Shown here: positions 1,973 through 29,556 of the stretch, piece by piece
Position numbering within the stretch: the stretch's first letter is position 1
Layout: each line of letters starts with the position of its first letter
Origin: Euprymna scolopes
Lineage: Eukaryota
DNA length: 35,650 bases
Assembly (NCBI GenBank): GCA_053919585.1
Contig: CM132805.1
Reading direction: 5' to 3' (one strand)
The notes under the pieces: generated by a model
The model's database searches: none
What the model saw: only the letters and a program-made list of their open reading frames with translations
What the model was told of the DNA's origin: nothing
Program-made: the position numbers and the translations under genes

Positions 1973-2251
1973 ATTTACTTCTCCAAAATAAAAATGCAAT
2001 TCATTGGATCTGGTCTGAAATACAAAAAATTTTATAAATGCACCCGCAGGGCACTTAAGAAAAAAATGTCTTTTCACTGAAAAAAAAAAAAAAGAATTTT
2101 TTTTTTTTTTTTTTTTTTAAACTCTTTCTCAAGCAATATTCCTAATTCTTTACCCTCTCAAAATCCCAAAACTTCTATCCAACAATACGTCTAGCTGCGT
2201 TTAGCTCCTGAAACCCCTCTTCCCTTTTAGCTTTTAAAATTTATAAAACAG

Positions 2252-2302
<51 letters not shown>

Positions 2303-2766
2303 TTTCTATACAACTTCTTGTCGTTATTGGCCTCTTTCTCCCCCTCCCTACTTGTTCTTATAGCGTTTTATTTTTAAAAAAATCTTTTTTTTTTATTTAT
2401 TTATTTTTTTTTTTAAACGATCGCACCATAACGGTAGTCCCTCCCCCTCCTCCGGCGTATCACTGTTCTATCAAAATTTCTTAGTTTTCCTTTCTCTCAT
2501 CTATGTACACTATTGTTGTAGTGATAACACTTCTTGTATCCTCAACATTGTAGATATTATGTATGATATCTGATGATGTCATTTGATTGACACAATACAA
2601 CATTTTTTTTTTTTTTTTTTCACCTTCAAAGTGTTTTTGTCTTTTTTCTTTTTCTTTTTCTTTTTTTCCTGGGATGACAAAATCTCTTGCAAATCCGTCT
2701 TTTATTTGCAAATATGTTTTGGAACTTTTTTTTTTTTTTTTTTTTTTTTTAGGTGAGGATTGATCA

Positions 2767-19559: not shown

Positions 19560-19685
19560 TTATTTTACTTTCTTTTTTTGTTTTGGTGAACAATTATGAC
19601 TATCTTATAAAGAATATATACTTAAAAATATATTATATACCTCTCTCTCTCATATAATTATTTACTATAATAATTATTAAATACT

Positions 19686-19727
19686 TACAGACACTAGTGT
19701 TTCATCCTTTTGGGAATCGTCAGTGCA
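19686..19727 (-). ncRNA. Type I hammerhead ribozyme, Sm-alpha-like
   Basis: UGCA-CUGACGA-UUCC-CAAAA-GGAU-GAAAC-ACUAGU-GUC^UGUA: 4-bp helix I, helix II, palindromic helix III ACACUAGUGU, GUC site. Confidence 0.75.
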
Positions 19728-19790
19728 GGGTGTCACGATTAATACCATAAATTCGAACCCACCGACAGAAGCCATCCCTGGCTCCATTAG

Positions 19791-19835
<45 letters not shown>

Positions 19836-20073
19836 CGAGAGAGAGAGATAGATAAAAAAAAAAAAAAAAAAAAGAAAAAAAAGGGGGACAAACCATTATA
19901 CAAAAAATATATTTTCAAATATTTGTACTGGTGTTTTGTTTTCTTAATTTCATTCACCCAGAGGAAGTCTTGCAATAAAGATTAAACGTTGATGAACACA
20001 TAACTTGGTTTGTTCCTTTATCTATCCATCTTGTCGGAATACTATCCTCATAATATATATATATATATATGAA

Positions 20074-20345
20074 AGCCTCCGTTCAGTCTCAAAAGATGTA
20101 AGTGTAGCTGCATGTGTAATTGTGAGGCAAGGGTTGTGCAATTCCCAACCACACCTCTCCTGAATCGGCACTGTTTGAGTCCAGTGACAAGGAAAGATTC
20201 AGGACAACTGGAAACAATGCAGAGATAAGCAGAGAGCACATACAGCACCTGGAATTCCCAAATGGTCACCCATTTTAGTACTGATCAGGCTCGACATTGC
20301 TAACTTCATGATCTAATTGGAACTAGTGTGTCAACGTGGTTATTT
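20074..20345 (-). mobile_element. 5S-derived SINE (SINE3-type) with RTE-like tail
   Basis: Head ACCACGTTGACACACTAGTTCCAATTAGATCATGAAGTTAGCAATGTCGAGCCTGATCAGTACTAAAATGGGTGACCATTTGGGAATTCCAGGTGCTGTA is near full-length 5S-like. Tail ...GAGACTGAACGGAGGC followed by (AT)n. Confidence 0.85.
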
Positions 20346-21847
20346 TAAATATATATATATATATAGACAATATTAAGCTAAATTCCAATAGCCAAGACTT
20401 TATACATTTTGATGGACTGTTTCCTGTATAGACGAACAACCAAAATTAATATTCTTGATCTTCTGACCACATGCTCTTCAGAAATCCAAAGTCAGCCGCC
20501 AGAAAAAATATATTATAAGGCAGCAATTAAGATATTACTTTTGGTTGTGCGTCATAAAAAAAAAAAATGGGAGAGTTGTCATAATCACATAAAAAAAACT
20601 TCCATAACAATGAAAATGATAATTTTATACTGCTATCCCAAAATGAAATCCCAAATGCCCAAATTCGAAAGACGTGAAAGAAAAAAAAAAAAAAAAAAAA
20701 ATCCAAGCTTAAGATTGCAGTCGACATTAAGGAAGAAAAATGAGTGGGGGAAAAAAAAAAAAAAAAAAAAAAAACGAAGGGGAAGGAGTAAGCCTCAAAA
20801 TTAATTATAATTCTTGTTATTTACCTGTCTCTTTTGTTAGGGTCATGGTCTTGGGGTGAGGAGAAGGAGTCATAATAAAGAGATGGTGGGGGGGGGGATG
20901 AAGACAGGTAGCGCCAGGTGACAGTGATGTAATCCAGAACAAATCACCTTATAAGGCACAGGAATACACAGTTTGGAGCCACGACCCCCTCCTGCGACCC
21001 CCTCCTGTGTCAGGTTCTAAGTCACACATGACATCACTTGTCAGGTGATGAGAAGAAATTAGACAACAGACCAGGGTTTTTGTCATCCTTGTGAAACAGA
21101 AGAGTTTAGCTAAAAATGGTAAAGAAAAATTAAGGCAGCACTGTGAAAAGAAAATGGGACAATTAAAAAGTGTGAAAAAAGATGAAAAAGAAGGGGCAGA
21201 AACACATTAGTCAGTGGGATTGGTCAAACTGAGGTCAAACTCATCATCAACATAAAGCTGACCAAACTAGAACCGTTCACGCCTATTGTCTGTTCGCATT
21301 AAACAGCTGTTTAAGAGCTCACGACAATTGATATTTCAGGAGGAGATTAACCACCGTTTCTGAAAGGTCAGTTTCTTTGAAAAACCCATTCTTCAGACAA
21401 CGAAAGTTTCTGACAAATGCTTGGCTGAACATAATTACAAAGTAGACAGAAAAATTTTAAATCCAACCAATATAACAATTCAGTTTGTTGACAAAATGAC
21501 ATTTCCACTACATTATTCATGATAGTAGTAATTTTATTAAACCTAAGCACGTGAAATTTGAAATGATAGATGTCAAGTTATATTTGTGTGTCTAGGCAAA
21601 AAAGAAAAGTGGTCAATGTAAAATAAGTTTCTTTTTGGAAAAAAAAAAAAAAAAAGAAAAGACCAAGAAATTACAGTTAATAAACATTGATATTCGCAAA
21701 TGTTACGATGTAATACCAATCTGACAAAAAATCGTCTGCACTGATACAAACAACTGAAAATCCCGTTGTGAAAACGGAATTAGAGATGGAGGACCCTGGG
21801 TAAACACTAAGAGAATGCCCGAAACAAAGGTATTCAGGTACTCTTCC

Positions 21848-25046: not shown

Positions 25047-25300
25047 AGTGCTCAATCATAAAATAGAGCTATTTATATATAATAAAAGTTTTATTTAAAC
25101 AAGCATATCATGGCTACATATCCTAAACATGTTTCAATTGTAATTTTTTTATAAGTTTGATTTCCTCAGGTGACAAAAATAAATGTCAGTTCTATATGTT
25201 TTTATATTGATGAATGAACATTTTATATTGAAAAGTAAAACATGTTCTGGATGCGTGATCATATGTTTATAAAAAATAAAAGTATATATATATATATAGG
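25047..25300. mobile_element. Decayed palindromic hammerhead module with terminal motif
   Basis: Minus strand: CTGAGGA (25169-25163), GAAAC-ATGTT (from 25135), AATAAA, then GCTC-N9-ATTGAGCACT (25069-25047). Degenerate mirror arm on the plus strand. Confidence 0.55.
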
Positions 25301-26554
25301 CTGTATAGTAAAACTCAAGTGCACAATGGATATATAAATTGATATTATTTTCAGCAAAACTAAAAATCTCATATCAAGCAAATCAATTTTTATTTCAAAA
25401 TAACTTCTTCATTATGGCTATACAGTTAAAGATGGAGAGCTGTAAAGGTTTATTTTAGCATGTGTATCGTTAAATATGGTTGTCTTTTCGTAAAATGTGC
25501 CAAAAGCTTTTAAAAAAATTTTTTTTTTATTTTGTATTTGTATTTATGAAGATTCATCAACTCTGTAAGATTCAAACTTTGTAAAAAAAAACCCCCAATA
25601 AAACAACAAAAAAAAAACATTACCAATGTCTTCATTGTACAGCAGCCAGGGGTTAACTCTAGACATGTTTAAATCAAGGAGATTTGATAGATTTTTTTTT
25701 TTTTTTCTTTTTTTTAACATACTTAGAACTTACATCCTCCCCATCATGGATTTAACAGAGTTTTCATTTGAGCAGTTGTTGCTTATTTTATAACATTAAA
25801 AAAAAGTGATATTTCAAATTTTTTATCCTGCTTCTTTTGGACTCATTGTTTTCATCATCTTTCGGCTTGGCCTTTGAGTCAAGATCACAGTGTAGTATCT
25901 GATGCTACACTTCATCTTTTCTGTCCTCTGTCAGTAGAGGAGAAATCCTTCATGATTGAGATAATTTTTATTTTTTTTCCTATCCAGAGTGCTCCTTTTT
26001 CTCAGGAACTGGATTTTCCCCCCCAAATTAAAAACCGACCTTGTGTCTAACTCTGCCCTCGTGGGGAGGCAAGTAAATAGGAATATGCAGGTAGTACTAA
26101 AACGTAATTGCTTTTGCATAAAGTTGCTAAATGTTTATATAATAAATATTTATAAAGCTCTAACTAGTATTGAGCACGTTTGAAAAAAAATATTAGTTTT
26201 GAGTTCATTTTATTAATATATTTGAACAATATATATATATATATATAAAATTTCATTTTAGGATTTTAATTTTTTTTTTTTTTTAATGAAGAGTTTTTAT
26301 TAAATATTGATTTAGGTGAATTTTCTAGAAATTCTCTTTTTGTCATAATGGCGTTTTTTTTTTTTTGTTTTTTTTTCAAGAAACAAATTTACTGCTGAAA
26401 CCTTTTGGAGAATAGTCTGACTTAATTGAAATCAAGAAAACTGCTTTAATATGAGGAAAACAATTGTATGAAAAAAAGAAAAGAAAAATCAATATAAAAT
26501 GTTTTAAACAAGTAACTCAGAATTTTATTATTTCATTATTACATATATATATAT

Positions 26555-26845
26555 TAGTAAGGGGACAATTTTAATATTTTTAATGATTTTGATACAATCA
26601 CCAATTCTCTACTAAATTCCTGATTGATACAATTACTGATTCCGATTCTTTTAAAATTTTTAAATATAGAGTTGTATTATAGAGGAAGGGGTTGGATTAC
26701 CGTAAAATGTAATGTAATATATGCATATATTTTTTTCACAGATAAAAAAAATCGTTTTTGGCATTAAAAAAATGAGCAAACATTTTTTGATTCTGATATC
26801 CCAAAAAGCTTTTCCAACTCTTGATTCTGATTAATCGTCCCAAAA
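26555..26845. mobile_element. Second copy of the 21848-22249 family
   Basis: Shared ATACAATTAC.GATTCC, GATTCCGATTCTTT, AATCG.TTTTGGCAT and ATTAATCGTCCC. Confidence 0.55.
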
Positions 26846-26850
26846 ATAAT

Positions 26851-26890
<40 letters not shown>

Positions 26891-26893
<3 letters not shown>

Positions 26894-27081
26894 TAAATGA
26901 CTAAAGTCTATTCCAAATTTCAAGATGTTAACCATCTTACCTTTTATTTTTTTATTAAGTATGTTGAATTGCACAATTCTTAAAGTACTTACAGAAATAA
27001 TGGGTAAGATGGTCAACATTTTGAAATTTGGACTATAGACTTTTGCCATTTATTTATATATGCTCTGTAGTTACATTGAGC
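26891..27081. mobile_element. Palindrome with ~50-bp arms followed by the GCTC-N9-ATTGAGC motif
   Basis: AAATAAATGACTAAAGTCTA..CCATCTTACC and GGTAAGATGG..TAGACTTTTGCCATTTATTT; motif at 27062-27081. Confidence 0.6.
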
Positions 27082-27085
27082 TTCA

Positions 27086-27180
27086 TAGTGGAGCAGGTTA
27101 TCTCAATATTCCATAAGAATTTCTTTCACTTAGTGATACAAGCAGCTAGTGAAAGATTGTTTCAGCAATCTGCCCCACTA
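27086..27180. mobile_element. ~95-bp mini-MITE, second copy
   Basis: Aligns end to end with 12686-12779. Confidence 0.8.
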
Positions 27181-27444
27181 TCATACCTTAAAGAATTGGT
27201 ATAAATAAAAGGCGAAATATAATTAAACATATTTTCCCATATATATGTGTTTATTTATTTTTTTTTTTGCATACTTTAGGATTTTACTTAACCCATTACC
27301 AGCCAGTGTCCCCATCAAAAATATCTATATTTACATTTGAATGTTTCCCTTAATTCAGCCACTAATGAGTTAAGTAAAAAAATAGCAACACTGTTCCATT
27401 CATTTTCAACAGTAAAATAATCCTATTATCCAAATTTGAATTAG

Positions 27445-27475
<31 letters not shown>

Positions 27476-28594
27476 AAACACCGAGAGGAAATCAACGGCA
27501 GAAGCAAATAATGGAATGATTTTTTTTTGTTTTTCAACATCACTATAAAAAAAAGAAAAAAAAAAAATGGATTCATTACTATTGCTAGTATACAAGTACC
27601 ATCTGATTTAATTTAGGATGACAAAGTCCATGCAGGGGAATGGGTGGAATGCGTAAGCAGGTCTTTCTTGCTGACCTAAGAAAGTTAAATAGTGATAACA
27701 CACTCTAAACTGGCCTTGTAAATAAAACTCACATATGAGGTGGGGAGGAGGGAGCTGGGGGTTATTAGAAATAGGAGGATGCAAGTCATTCTTTGGAATG
27801 TTTATCATTTTTTGTCTTTCGACAAAAGGCTACTGATTTCAATTGGTTATCATTTTTGGTTCAATAATTTAGTAAAAATCTGGGCGTAAATGCTGTAACA
27901 CTTGGTACCAGCACAAACACAGCCGACAGAAATGTATAGGCACAACGCGCATACGCATCTTGACAAGAATGCATACAAACGAATCAGATTAGTTTGTATA
28001 TAAGCACAATCATAGAATTTTTTTTTTTTTTTATGCAAACGACAGCAAAATAGATTTTGGTTAATCATTTTCGACCTTAAGAAAAAATAAACCACATAAA
28101 AAAAAGCAAACACTGAAAAGTTCCCAGAGAATAGTGTTATATATAAAAAAAAAATTTATACATAATTTTAAATTCAAGGCAAAGTCTTAAAAAATAGATT
28201 TATAAAATTAATTTTTATTTCATGTATTTTTTTTTTTTATGTTTTTAAATTATTTTTTTAAATTAATCTTTTTTGTCTTTATTTTAATTATTCTTGAAAT
28301 AATTAAAAGGAAACCGAGAAAAATAGATTAACAGAGTTATCGTCCTTGTTTTTTTTGTTTCAAGGGGTGGGGGAGAACATAATTTCATGAAACTTCTTTA
28401 TCATTTTGTAAGAGTCAATTTGAACAACCACCCTTATCTCAGTCGGTTAATGGCAGCCAAATATAAACTAATCTTTATTCTCAGAAAAATTATCATTTAT
28501 CGAATTTGGAAAGAAAAATATATTAAGCATCATGTTTGATGAGAAATAGATAAATATTATATATATAATTCTGTATTTTTAGAGAAATAAAAAC

Positions 28595-28851
28595 AGTGCT
28601 CAATTACATTTGCAAGAGGAGCATAATATATTTATTATATATCATATTATACAGTGATATTTTGATTAGTCATTGATATCTGTAGTTTCAGGAAGTATAG
28701 GAAATACTATCTATTTGGCTAAAAAAATATATCTTCATCAGAATGTAGAATATATGCAAGATGTAACAAATATTTAAAAAGAAATTGATTTTAAATATTT
28801 TTTATCATTTAAAAAAATTATTTTAAAGCTCTATCTTAAGGGATATTGAGC
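28595..28851. mobile_element. Old module bounded by outward-facing GCTC..ATTGAGC motifs, with a decayed minus-strand hammerhead core
   Basis: Motifs at 28595-28622 (-) and 28828-28851 (+). Minus strand CTGATGA 28741-28735, GAAAC 28689-28685, then AATAAA. Confidence 0.45.
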
Positions 28852-28921
28852 CTTTTGTGTGTGTAAAATTTGTTGTCTTGAATTGGATATGTTCTGACTC
28901 CGAAAAGTTAATTTTTTTTTT

Positions 28922-28955
<34 letters not shown>

Positions 28956-29040
28956 GTGGAGATGGTAATTAATAAAAACTGAAGAAAGTGCTCAATACTG
29001 TTGTAGAGCAAATATGCGTTTTATTTTTTATTACCGTATC

Positions 29041-29119
29041 TTTCTGTTAAGTTACATTATTGTTTCGGCTTCACGGCCGTTTTTTTGGCCGTCTGTAGCG
29101 TCCTCAGACTTTTACAAAA
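29041..29119 (-). ncRNA. Type I hammerhead ribozyme (left arm)
   Basis: AAGU-CUGAGGA-C-GCUACAGACGGCC..GGCCGUGAAGC-C-GAAAC-AAUAAU-GUA^ACUU; one extra mismatch in helix II relative to the right arm. Confidence 0.75.
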
Positions 29120-29151
29120 ATTTTCGCTATTTCATCCCAAAATAGCAAACA

Positions 29152-29231
29152 TTTCTGTAAAAGTCTGAGGACGCTACAAACGGCCAAAAAAACGGCCGTG
29201 TAGCCGAAACAATAATGTAACTTAACAGAAA
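29152..29231 (+). ncRNA. Type I hammerhead ribozyme (right arm)
   Basis: Helix I AAGU/ACUU extended by UUUCUGU/ACAGAAA; CUGAGGA 29165-29171; helix II GCUACA/UGUAGC plus CGGCC/GGCCG; GAAAC 29206-29210; helix III ACA/UGU; GUA site, cut after 29219. Confidence 0.8.
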
Positions 29232-29319
29232 GATACGGTAATAAAAAATAAAACGTATATATATATATGTACACACACACACACACAGTGCTTTAGGGCA
29301 TGTTGAAAAGAATTAATAA

Positions 29320-29556
29320 AGTGCTCAATTGCAAAAATGTGAGAGCTAAAATACAAATTATTTATTTAAAAACTATATGCTACATATTTCAGAGATGTAC
29401 CATGGTTTCATTGACATGGATTGACGTTTTATCATTGAAAAGTATATAAAGATGCTGGAATAAATTCAAATTATTAGTAACTCACACAATGAAAACAAAC
29501 ATGCCAATGAAACCATGATATGTTTCTGAATATGTAACAGTTTTTAAATAATTTGT
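29320..29556. mobile_element. Decayed palindromic hammerhead-type module with terminal motif
   Basis: Inverted arms CATGGTTTCATTG and CAATGAAACCATG. Minus strand GAAAC-CATG-GTA (palindromic ACCATGGT), AATAAA, then GCTC-N13-ATTGAGCACT (29346-29320). Confidence 0.6.

What the first reader, a model, noticed from the sequence alone, without database searches (positions are those of the whole stretch)
19640..19790. Sm-alpha-like hammerhead downstream of a Pol III B-box: candidate ribozyme-carrying SINE
Seen on the minus strand: GGTTCGAATTT (B-box-like, 19759-19749), then about 20 nt later UGCA-CUGACGA-UUCCCAAAAGGAU-GAAACACUAGUGUC^UGUA, then an AT-rich tail. Helix III is a perfect 10-nt palindrome (19691-19700). 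Established: Schistosoma Sm-alpha repeats couple a tRNA-like Pol III head to a hammerhead whose core I recall as CUGACGAGUCCCAAAUAGGACGAAA, and palindromic helix III allows dimeric cleavage. Inference: an analogous SINE-hammerhead family in this animal. The A-box is not clearly visible.
Basis: partly seen in the sequence, partly recalled or inferred. Interest (0 to 1): 0.7.

Follow-up and report, generated by a model that had tools for sequence, protein, structure and literature searches.

The report
Truncated hammerhead-carrying SINE-like retroposon copy
The stretch is a worn, 5'-truncated copy of an abundant 343-base non-coding mobile element of this animal genome, which joins tRNA-gene-type promoter boxes to a small self-cutting RNA motif and inserts into (TA)n repeats; the design is already known from blood flukes and animal "retrozymes", so this is a new family of a known kind, not a new kind.

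Summary

It is not a chance motif. It is one copy (window 19793-19653, minus strand) of a dispersed 343-nt repeat with at least 7,000 first-look candidates across 30 or more chromosomes of the 5.9-Gb genome. Full units carry an A-box 54 nt upstream of the B-box, then the hammerhead, then an AT-rich end fused to (TA)n. They also carry a Penelope-type tail hairpin motif.

The window copy starts at unit position 201, so it lacks the A-box. It is 9% diverged, has a 5-nt deletion and a helix I mismatch, and is a fossil.

- Family helix II is UUCC/GGAU (U.U at 10.1/11.1 in 71 of 76 copies), not GUCC/GGAC.
- The promoter boxes sit mid-unit, not at the 5' head.

Copies have a fixed 3' end and variable 5' ends, and most carry a seamless extra partial unit upstream. 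This pattern fits reverse transcription of a circular or multimeric RNA, as proposed for Penelope-dependent retrozymes.

Cleavage and expression could not be tested. Earlier notes of this scan describe what appear to be the same or sister tRNA-box-plus-hammerhead families elsewhere in this genome.

The parts
19653..19793 (-). 5'-truncated copy (unit positions 201-343) of the 343-nt repeat family; 91% identical to the family majority; 5-nt deletion just after the B-box
19749..19759 (-). Pol III B-box-like GGTTCGAATTT (family majority GGTTCGAATCT, unit 235-245)
19684..19729 (-). type I hammerhead motif (helix I 5' strand through helix I 3' strand); Rfam RF00163 26.6 bits, below gathering score 34
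19717..19723 (-). core C3-A9, CUGACGA
19704..19716 (-). helix II and loop UUCC-CAAAA-GGAU; U.U at 10.1/11.1 as in the family; loop CpG of the majority (CGAAA) decayed to CA here
19691..19703 (-). G12-A14 (GAA) followed by the 10-nt palindromic helix III ACACUAGUGU
19684..19690 (-). C17 (19690; expected cut 19690|19689) and helix I 3' strand UGUAAG, which has one G-to-A change versus the family UGUAGG, giving a C.A mismatch
19653..19683 (-). AT-rich 3' end of the unit, ending AAUAAUUAUA; the constant 3' terminus of family copies
19794..19828 (.). (AT)18 microsatellite abutting the truncated 5' end; (TA)n flanks most family copies on both sides

Best explanation
Window 19793-19653 (minus strand) is a dead, 5'-truncated insertion of a 343-nt non-coding retroposon family.

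Shown here:
- The full unit carries, in order: a Penelope-type tail hairpin motif (ACUC-N-GUUGAGCACU, unit 22-44); about 130 nt of spacer; A-box-like and B-box-like Pol III promoter elements (unit 181-191 and 235-245) inside a long closing stem; a type I hammerhead (unit 270-315, cut at 309|310) with a 10-nt palindromic helix III; and an AU-rich end (unit 335-343) fused to (TA)n.
- Copies have a constant 3' end and variable 5' ends.
- Copies usually carry a seamless extra partial unit upstream.
- Copies are flanked by (TA)n.

Inferred mechanism:
- A master copy of more than one unit is transcribed. Pol III acting from the internal boxes is the likeliest polymerase, because the sense strand has no T4 terminator.
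- Two hammerheads pair through helix III as a dimer and cut out a 343-nt monomer.
- A host RtcB-type ligase circularises the monomer.
- A Penelope-like element's reverse transcriptase/GIY-YIG nuclease nicks a (TA)n target, primes on the AU-rich stretch of the RNA and copies around the circle (or along a multimer) for more than one turn. This gives [partial unit][full unit](TA)n insertions.

The window copy stopped after 143 nt. It has no A-box and no second hammerhead, and it can neither be transcribed on its own nor be excised.
For: - Family and copy number: 2,522 first-look candidates for the 3' part and 7,077 for the full unit. The scored copies are 88-94% identical and lie on 30 or more chromosome-scale contigs.
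- Architecture: the majority profile from 82 distinct copies gives the unit map.
- Ends: 84 of 92 hits end at unit 340-346, while starts are spread over the unit.
- Partial tandems: about 21 of 29 full copies have a directly abutting, 5'-truncated upstream unit with a seamless 343-to-1 junction.
- Flanks: (TA)n lies on both sides in most copies.
- Literature on targets: (TA)n preference, partial-tandem pseudo-LTRs and 3'-proximal hammerheads are described for Penelope-like elements (PMC8557442).
- Hammerhead state in the family: of 76 copies covering the motif, 47 keep the core and 31 keep the core plus all helices.
- Subfamilies: copies only 74-83% identical to the majority still keep the hammerhead block and the B-box far better than the linkers.
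- Dimer: homodimer co-fold of the majority motif gives the trans hammerhead with a 10-bp helix III (-29.0 against 2 x -11.2 kcal/mol). The monomer MFE is a non-hammerhead fold.
- Excised monomer: a natural monomer lying between two cut sites (L050:1535-1877, exactly 343 nt) folds at -87.4 kcal/mol, z = -3.4, with 0 of 100 shuffles as stable.
- Terminators: the sense strand of the majority has no TTTT and the antisense strand has six.
- Tail motif: TTGAGCAC occurs five times in this window's Penelope-type elements against 0.6 expected, in the same hammerhead / AT-rich spacer / hairpin order.
- Helpers: Penelope-like elements are extremely abundant and partly open. There are 15,396 GIY-YIG candidates with frames up to 870 aa, and RVT_1 plus GIY-YIG were confirmed for one element.
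- Precedents: Sm-alpha (PMC2770079); animal non-LTR retrozymes of about 150-350 nt, including a 353-nt mussel unit (PMC7229834, PMC7761336); and their derivation from Penelope pseudo-LTRs (bioRxiv 10.64898/2026.07.22.740005).
Against: - Transcription, cleavage and circles are therefore all inferred.
- The hammerhead lacks the G10.1-C11.1 pair that PMC4209133 calls highly conserved. G10.1 contributes to a metal site together with the A9 phosphate (PMC7151607), so activity may be low or absent.
- Rfam scores are below the gathering score for the window copy (26.6 against 34) and for near-majority copies (about 21 bits).
- tRNA ancestry is not demonstrated.
- The absence of TTTT is only weakly unusual (6% of shuffles).
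- None of 30 Penelope loci showed nucleotide similarity to the unit, so the helper is unidentified.
- Insertion ends do not coincide with the ribozyme cut site, so cleavage does not define the ends of the copied template.
- Inverted partial copies, common for Penelope elements, were seen once in about 60 loci.
Confidence: 0.68

Rival explanations
1. The family is an ordinary Pol III SINE (or Penelope-dependent SINE) in which the hammerhead-like block is a non-catalytic relic. On this reading the block is kept only because it is part of the 3' module that the reverse transcriptase recognises.
For: U.U replaces G10.1-C11.1 in 71 of 76 copies. Rfam scores are sub-threshold. Copy ends do not map to the cut site. 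PMC4209133 reports low in vitro activity for Penelope-associated hammerheads, and PMC8557442 notes that Penelope clades without hammerheads proliferate well.
Against: All 11 minimal-core positions plus A15.1-U16.1 and C17 are intact in the majority. Helices I and III are perfect and helix III is palindromic, as in dimer-active hammerheads. The block is the best-kept part of divergent subfamily copies.
Confidence: 0.2
2. The family is a retrozyme transcribed by read-through or Pol II, as proposed for other animal retrozymes. On this reading the A- and B-box-like strings are vestiges of a tRNA-derived ancestor with no present promoter role.
For: PMC7761336 states that animal retrozymes seem to carry no promoters. 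No tRNA model hit was found. The boxes lie mid-unit rather than at the 5' head.
Against: The B-box is conserved in subfamily copies whose neighbouring linkers have diverged. The A-to-B spacing of 54 nt start to start is in the working range for type-2 promoters. The sense strand has no T4 run while the antisense strand has six. Sm-alpha shows that the combination exists (PMC2770079).
Confidence: 0.1
3. The motif is a chance hammerhead-like string or part of a satellite array, not a mobile element.
For: The Rfam score is below the gathering score. The surroundings are AT-rich and full of microsatellites.
Against: Thousands of dispersed copies keep the same arrangement on many chromosomes. None in the sample exceeds two units, each lies in unique flanks, and the copies show 5' truncations with a fixed 3' end.
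Confidence: 0.02

Closest known systems
Schistosoma Sm-alpha / Sj-alpha SINE-like elements
   Same: A short (about 335 nt, from my own memory of Ferbeyre et al. 1998, which I could not open), non-coding, high-copy element. It combines tRNA-type Pol III promoter elements with a type I hammerhead whose weak or palindromic helix III favours dimeric cleavage. Copies are dispersed and partly tandem (PMC2770079; PMC4209133).
   Different: Sm-alpha heads are recognised as tRNA-Gln by tRNAscan-SE (PMC2770079); here no tRNA model fires. The Sm-alpha hammerhead has the canonical GUCC..GGAC helix II (Rfam consensus); here it is UUCC..GGAU. Here the boxes lie mid-unit, and the unit ends in (TA)n with a Penelope-type tail hairpin. 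The host is a different phylum (a mollusc according to earlier scan notes, not verified here).
Animal non-LTR retrozymes (Cervera and de la Pena 2020; Li, Clavereau and Pollet 2026 preprint)
   Same: Repeats of 150-350 nt, each with a type I hammerhead, without LTR, PBS or PPT. The monomer RNA is highly self-paired, and mobilisation by Penelope-like elements is proposed. The mussel unit of 353 nt is close in size to this 343-nt unit (PMC7229834, PMC7761336).
   Different: Retrozymes are described as lacking promoters (PMC7761336), whereas this family carries A- and B-box-like elements. Most invertebrate retrozyme hammerheads are reported to cleave as monomers with a stable helix III; here the monomer fold is not a hammerhead and the dimer is. 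circRNA is not shown here. Copies in my sample are 1-2 units long, not long tandems.
Penelope-like element pseudo-LTR hammerheads (Cervera and de la Pena 2014; Craig et al. 2021)
   Same: (TA)n targets, partial-tandem structure, a hammerhead near the 3' end, palindromic 15.2-16.2/loop 3, and a tail hairpin motif shared with Penelope-type elements in this same window (PMC8557442; PMC4209133).
   Different: There is no ORF. This hammerhead is the canonical-size type I form (4-position helix II with a CCCGAAAGG-like loop) rather than the minimal Penelope variant with a 6-8 bp helix II. There was no nucleotide similarity to 30 sampled autonomous Penelope loci.

Membership tests
Hammerhead ribozyme (type I) | Core C3U4G5A6N7G8A9 ... 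G12A13A14, A15.1-U16.1 pair, H17 at the cleavage site | tested here: met
   Window copy: CUGACGA, GAA, A...U closing helix III, and C17 at 19690. Family: core intact in 47 of 76 copies. Core definition taken from PMC7151607.
Hammerhead ribozyme (type I) | Three helices around the core, with helix I open (type I) | tested here: met
   Majority: helix I 6 bp, helix II 3 bp plus U.U, helix III a 10-nt palindrome. Window copy: helix I 5 of 6 pairs.
Hammerhead ribozyme (type I) | Conserved G10.1-C11.1 pair closing helix II | tested here: not met
   U/U in 71 of 76 copies, including the window copy. PMC4209133 calls this pair highly conserved.
Hammerhead ribozyme (type I) | Score at or above the Rfam gathering threshold | tested here: not met
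   RF00163 scores 26.6 bits against 34. Near-majority copies score about 21 bits to HH9 or type III models.
Hammerhead ribozyme (type I) | Site-specific self-cleavage | not testable with these tools
   Needs in vitro transcription of monomeric and dimeric constructs.
tRNA-derived SINE (Sm-alpha type) | Internal Pol III A and B boxes at tRNA-like spacing | tested here: met
   Family: TAGCCGAATGG at unit 181-191 and GGTTCGAATCT at unit 235-245. The window copy has only the B-box because it starts at unit 201.
tRNA-derived SINE (Sm-alpha type) | Head recognisably derived from a tRNA (cloverleaf or sequence) | tested here: inconclusive
   No default ARAGORN hit in 25 loci. No Rfam tRNA hit at E<=10 in two near-majority copies. 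ARAGORN at an 80% threshold gives a 96-nt class-II-like cloverleaf, and 7 of 300 shuffles also hit.
tRNA-derived SINE (Sm-alpha type) | Short, non-coding, dispersed, high copy number, fixed 3' end with 5' truncations | tested here: met
tRNA-derived SINE (Sm-alpha type) | Promoter at the 5' head of the element | tested here: not met
   The boxes lie 180 nt into the 343-nt unit as delimited by insertion ends.
Animal non-LTR retrozyme | Repeated units each bearing a type I hammerhead, so that two cuts release a monomer | tested here: met
   13-14 of 29 full copies have a second upstream hammerhead. Cut sites are exactly 343 nt apart in L050.
Animal non-LTR retrozyme | Accumulation of monomer-size circular RNA | not testable with these tools
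Penelope-dependent non-autonomous element | (TA)n target preference and partial-tandem (pseudo-LTR-like) insertions | tested here: met
   Criteria taken from PMC8557442.
Penelope-dependent non-autonomous element | 3' module shared with an autonomous Penelope-like element of the same genome | tested here: inconclusive
   There is motif-level sharing of the hammerhead / AT-rich spacer / GCUC-N-UUGAGCACU hairpin with Penelope-type elements in the window and in L074. There was no BLAST similarity to 30 GIY-YIG loci with 1.5-kb flanks. No more genome sequence could be fetched.

The most novel reading that the evidence does not exclude
This family would be a self-promoted retrozyme. Its own internal Pol III promoter would drive transcription of units of more than one length. 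A hammerhead variant lacking G10.1-C11.1 would cleave only as a helix-III dimer to release 343-nt circles. A Penelope reverse transcriptase, primed from (TA)n, would then copy those circles in rolling-circle fashion. That would be the first case outside flatworms of a retrozyme that carries its own promoter, and a natural test of how dispensable the 10.1-11.1 pair is.
Probability: 0.25. Interest if true: 0.55.

Novelty: new member of a known kind. Interest (0 to 1): 0.33.

Why it matters
The review literature says animal retrozymes seem to lack promoters and that no motif points to their helper (PMC7761336). A very abundant family that carries Pol III boxes, a Penelope-type tail and (TA)n-targeted, longer-than-unit insertions gives both questions a concrete test system. 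Its systematic U.U at 10.1/11.1 is a natural experiment on a nearly invariant hammerhead position. For the window itself the matter is ordinary: a dead repeat fragment in a repeat-rich, apparently non-coding region.

Tried and rejected
- Rfam scan of 8 whole loci in E-value mode returned only AT-repeat miRNA noise and lost the hammerheads to the filters.
- tRNA detection: default ARAGORN on the window and 25 loci found nothing, and Rfam tRNA gave no hit. I therefore do not call the head tRNA-derived, only Pol III-box-bearing.
- Helper search: 30 GIY-YIG loci showed no BLAST similarity to the unit and few hammerheads within their 1.5-kb flanks. One abundant Penelope element (L080) ends in (AT)n about 75 nt after a hammerhead-like motif with a different tail.
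- An apparent hotspot of 5' ends at unit position about 201 (window, L005, L013, L021) was rejected as selection bias. Those loci were ranked by similarity to a query that included the (AT)n junction, and the unbiased second sample shows no such cluster.
- An apparent fixed 5' end at unit 293 is an artefact of how candidates are clipped. The upstream partial units start at many positions.
- Per-column conservation among copies shows only CpG decay and no extra conservation of the core. This is expected for neutrally decaying copies and says nothing for or against function.
- Ferbeyre et al. 1998 and Lunse et al. 2017 are not held in the library.

Full report
**1. Observation**

- B-box-like GGTTCGAATTT at 19759-19749.
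- Helix I 5' strand CCUGCA at 19729-19724.
- Core CUGACGA at 19723-19717.
- Helix II and loop UUCC-CAAAA-GGAU at 19716-19704.
- GAA at 19703-19701.
- The perfect palindrome ACACUAGUGU at 19700-19691.
- C17 at 19690, so the cut would fall between 19690 and 19689.
- UGUAAG at 19689-19684, followed by an AT-rich stretch ending about 19653.

Rfam's type I hammerhead model aligns end to end with 26.6 bits. The gathering score is 34. E is 0.00056 in a 1.2-kb scan and 0.017 over the whole window, where it is the only hammerhead-clan match with E<=1. No tRNA is found in the window.

**2. It is a repeat family**

A search of the window's own 5.9-Gb assembly with 19640-19800 gave 2,522 first-look candidates. 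The 40 scored copies are 88-90% identical over 142-147 nt and lie on many chromosome-scale contigs.

Aligning 29 of them with flanks showed that most copies extend about 200 nt further upstream than the window copy. I took the most central natural copy (L023:1498-1843, minus strand) as a 346-nt query. It found 7,077 candidates, and the 40 scored copies are 90-94% identical over the whole unit.

A query-anchored profile of 82 distinct copies gives the unit map:

| Unit position | Feature |
|---|---|
| 1 | UAUGUCAGCCCC |
| 22-44 | hairpin ACUC-N-GUUGAGCACU |
| 181-191 | A-box-like TAGCCGAATGG |
| 235-245 | B-box-like GGTTCGAATCT |
| 270-315 | hammerhead, cut at 309\|310 |
| 335-343 | AAUAAUUAU, fused to (TA)n |

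The median copy is 94% identical to the majority. The window copy is 91% identical. It covers only unit 201-343 and has a 5-nt deletion just after the B-box. It has a G-to-A change in the helix I 3' strand.

It is the only copy of this family in the window. It has no A-box because it is 5'-truncated, and (AT)18 abuts the truncation point.

**3.

"Other copies do not link the B-box with the ribozyme" is not what is seen. Every copy long enough has both at the same spacing.
- An intact A-box is present in full units.
- The expected GUCC..GGAC helix II is not present. Positions 10.1/11.1 are U/U in 71 of 76 copies, and this holds in subfamily copies only 74-83% identical to the majority.

So the U.U is a family trait, not damage to this copy.

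The minimal core as defined in PMC7151607 is complete: C3-A9, G12-A14, A15.1-U16.1 and H17. However, PMC4209133 lists G10.1-C11.1 as highly conserved, and G10.1 helps bind a metal ion together with the A9 phosphate (PMC7151607, PMC6257768). Activity is therefore an open question.

Of 76 copies covering the motif, 47 keep the core and 31 keep the core plus all helices.

**4. Dimer behaviour and RNA structure**

The majority motif folded alone takes a non-hammerhead fold (-11.2 kcal/mol). Two molecules together form a 10-bp intermolecular helix III with helix I made in trans (-29.0 kcal/mol). This is the classical dimeric hammerhead.

The window copy's dimer loses helix I. Dimer-dependent cleavage through a weak or palindromic helix III is the documented behaviour of many animal type I hammerheads (PMC4209133, PMC7761336).

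In L050 two cut sites lie exactly 343 nt apart. That natural monomer folds to -87.4 kcal/mol with z = -3.4, and none of 100 shuffles is as stable. The box-bearing region is enclosed by a long stem. Retrozyme RNAs are likewise described as highly self-paired (PMC7229834).

**5. Promoter question**

The A- and B-box-like strings each match the type-2 consensus at 10 of 11 positions (consensus from my own knowledge). They lie 54 nt apart, start to start.

The B-box stays intact in divergent subfamily copies whose neighbouring linkers have changed. The sense strand of the majority has no TTTT while the antisense strand has six, although 6% of shuffles also lack TTTT.

No tRNA model recognises the head. 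ARAGORN does so only at an 80% threshold, which 2.3% of shuffles also pass. I therefore describe the head as Pol III-box-bearing, with tRNA ancestry unproven.

The boxes lie mid-unit. A Pol III transcript from a single unit would therefore lack unit 1-170. Only copies of more than one unit could give a full-length template.

**6. How copies are made**

Eighty-four of 92 hits end at unit 340-346, while their starts are scattered. About 21 of 29 full copies carry a directly abutting, 5'-truncated extra unit upstream with a seamless 343-to-1 junction. 13-14 of the 29 thereby contain two hammerheads, and three contain a complete upstream promoter as well.

Both flanks are usually (TA)n. One head-to-head inverted pair was seen (L056).

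A fixed 3' end, variable 5' ends and copies longer than one unit indicate target-primed reverse transcription of a template longer than one unit. That template would be either a multimeric transcript or a circle copied for more than one turn.

The insertion ends do not coincide with the ribozyme cut site. A linear, ribozyme-cut monomer therefore cannot be the template, but a religated circle can.

(TA)n targets, partial-tandem pseudo-LTRs, tails and 3'-proximal hammerheads are hallmarks of Penelope-like elements (PMC8557442). A 2026 preprint argues that animal retrozymes derive from Penelope pseudo-LTRs.

The octamer TTGAGCAC of the unit's hairpin occurs five times in this window's Penelope-type elements at 25048-29328, against 0.6 expected. 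There, and in L074, it follows a hammerhead and an AT-rich spacer just as it does in the unit.

The genome holds at least 15,396 GIY-YIG candidates with open frames up to 870 aa. One element was confirmed as RVT_1 plus GIY-YIG. However, 30 such loci share no nucleotide similarity with the unit, so the helper is not identified.

**7. What could not be done**

I have no RNA evidence for transcription, cleavage or circles.

This stopped both the comparison with the species' own tRNAs and a deeper helper search.

I did not establish the species. Earlier scan notes call it a mollusc.

**8. Comparison and verdict**

The closest known things are the following:
- Schistosoma Sm-alpha/Sj-alpha, which are SINE-like, have a tRNA-Gln-like head and carry a hammerhead (PMC2770079).
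- Animal non-LTR retrozymes (PMC7229834).
- Penelope pseudo-LTR hammerheads (PMC4209133).

The family works like a blend of these. It fails two membership features of a textbook hammerhead: the G10.1-C11.1 pair and the Rfam threshold. It also fails one feature of a textbook SINE, because the promoter is not at the 5' head.

Earlier notes of this scan describe 345-348-nt tRNA-box-plus-hammerhead units inserted in (TA)n elsewhere in this same genome, and they reached the same class (s1-295506, s1-241402). These are probably the same or sister families, but I could not compare sequences.

It is a new family of a known kind, and the window copy itself is a fossil.

Noticed in passing
window 20236-20353 (-), extending below 20180: A 5S rRNA-like sequence (Rfam RF00001, 42.9 bits, above the gathering score) belongs to a dispersed repeat. 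There are 4,724 first-look candidates, and the 40 scored copies are 83-89% identical, start near the 5S start and run past the query end. This looks like a 5S-derived SINE family (SINE3-type). It lies about 440 nt upstream of the hammerhead copy on the same strand but is not part of that family.
   Followed up: partly
G000:C11:1.68-2.16 Mb: The best-scoring tRNA matches in the genome (more than 60, 64-80 bits) almost all lie on one strand within about 0.5 Mb of contig 11. This is a very large tandem tRNA gene cluster. The first look counted about 506,000 tRNA-like candidates genome-wide, which suggests massive tRNA-derived repeats.
   Followed up: no
L076 about 2130-2385 (-): A second, different element joins tRNA-like boxes (TGGCATAACGG ... 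GGTTCGAATCC) to a hammerhead (CUGAUGA-GAGG..CUUU-GAAAC, palindrome ACGCGU) and ends directly in (TA)n. It sits about 560 nt upstream of a Penelope GIY-YIG remnant on the same strand. Here position 10.1 is G.
   Followed up: no
L080 870-960 (-), and L068/L075/L080 in general: An abundant Penelope-like element (RVT_1 plus GIY-YIG, frames to about 806 aa) has a hammerhead-like motif about 480 nt after its stop codon. The motif reads UUGAAGA, one unpaired A, GCCCG..CGGGC, GAAAC. About 75 nt after the motif the element ends in (AT)n. The first core base is U rather than C.
   Followed up: partly
window 25048, 26170, 28596, 28988, 29321: There are five copies of the tail motif (A/G)CUC-N8-14-AUUGAGCAC, against 0.6 expected for the octamer. 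Each is preceded by an AT-rich spacer and, in several cases, by a hammerhead-like core. This is the same module order as in the 343-nt family.
   Followed up: partly
window 19854-19882 (+): An A29 run on the plus strand lies right next to (CT)n and (AT)18, upstream of the truncated copy. It may be the tail of another retroposon on the plus strand.
   Followed up: no
L048 1460-2127 (+): One insertion spans exactly two units and both begins and ends near unit position 302, inside helix III and close to the cut site. This is unlike the usual 3' end at unit 343.
   Followed up: no
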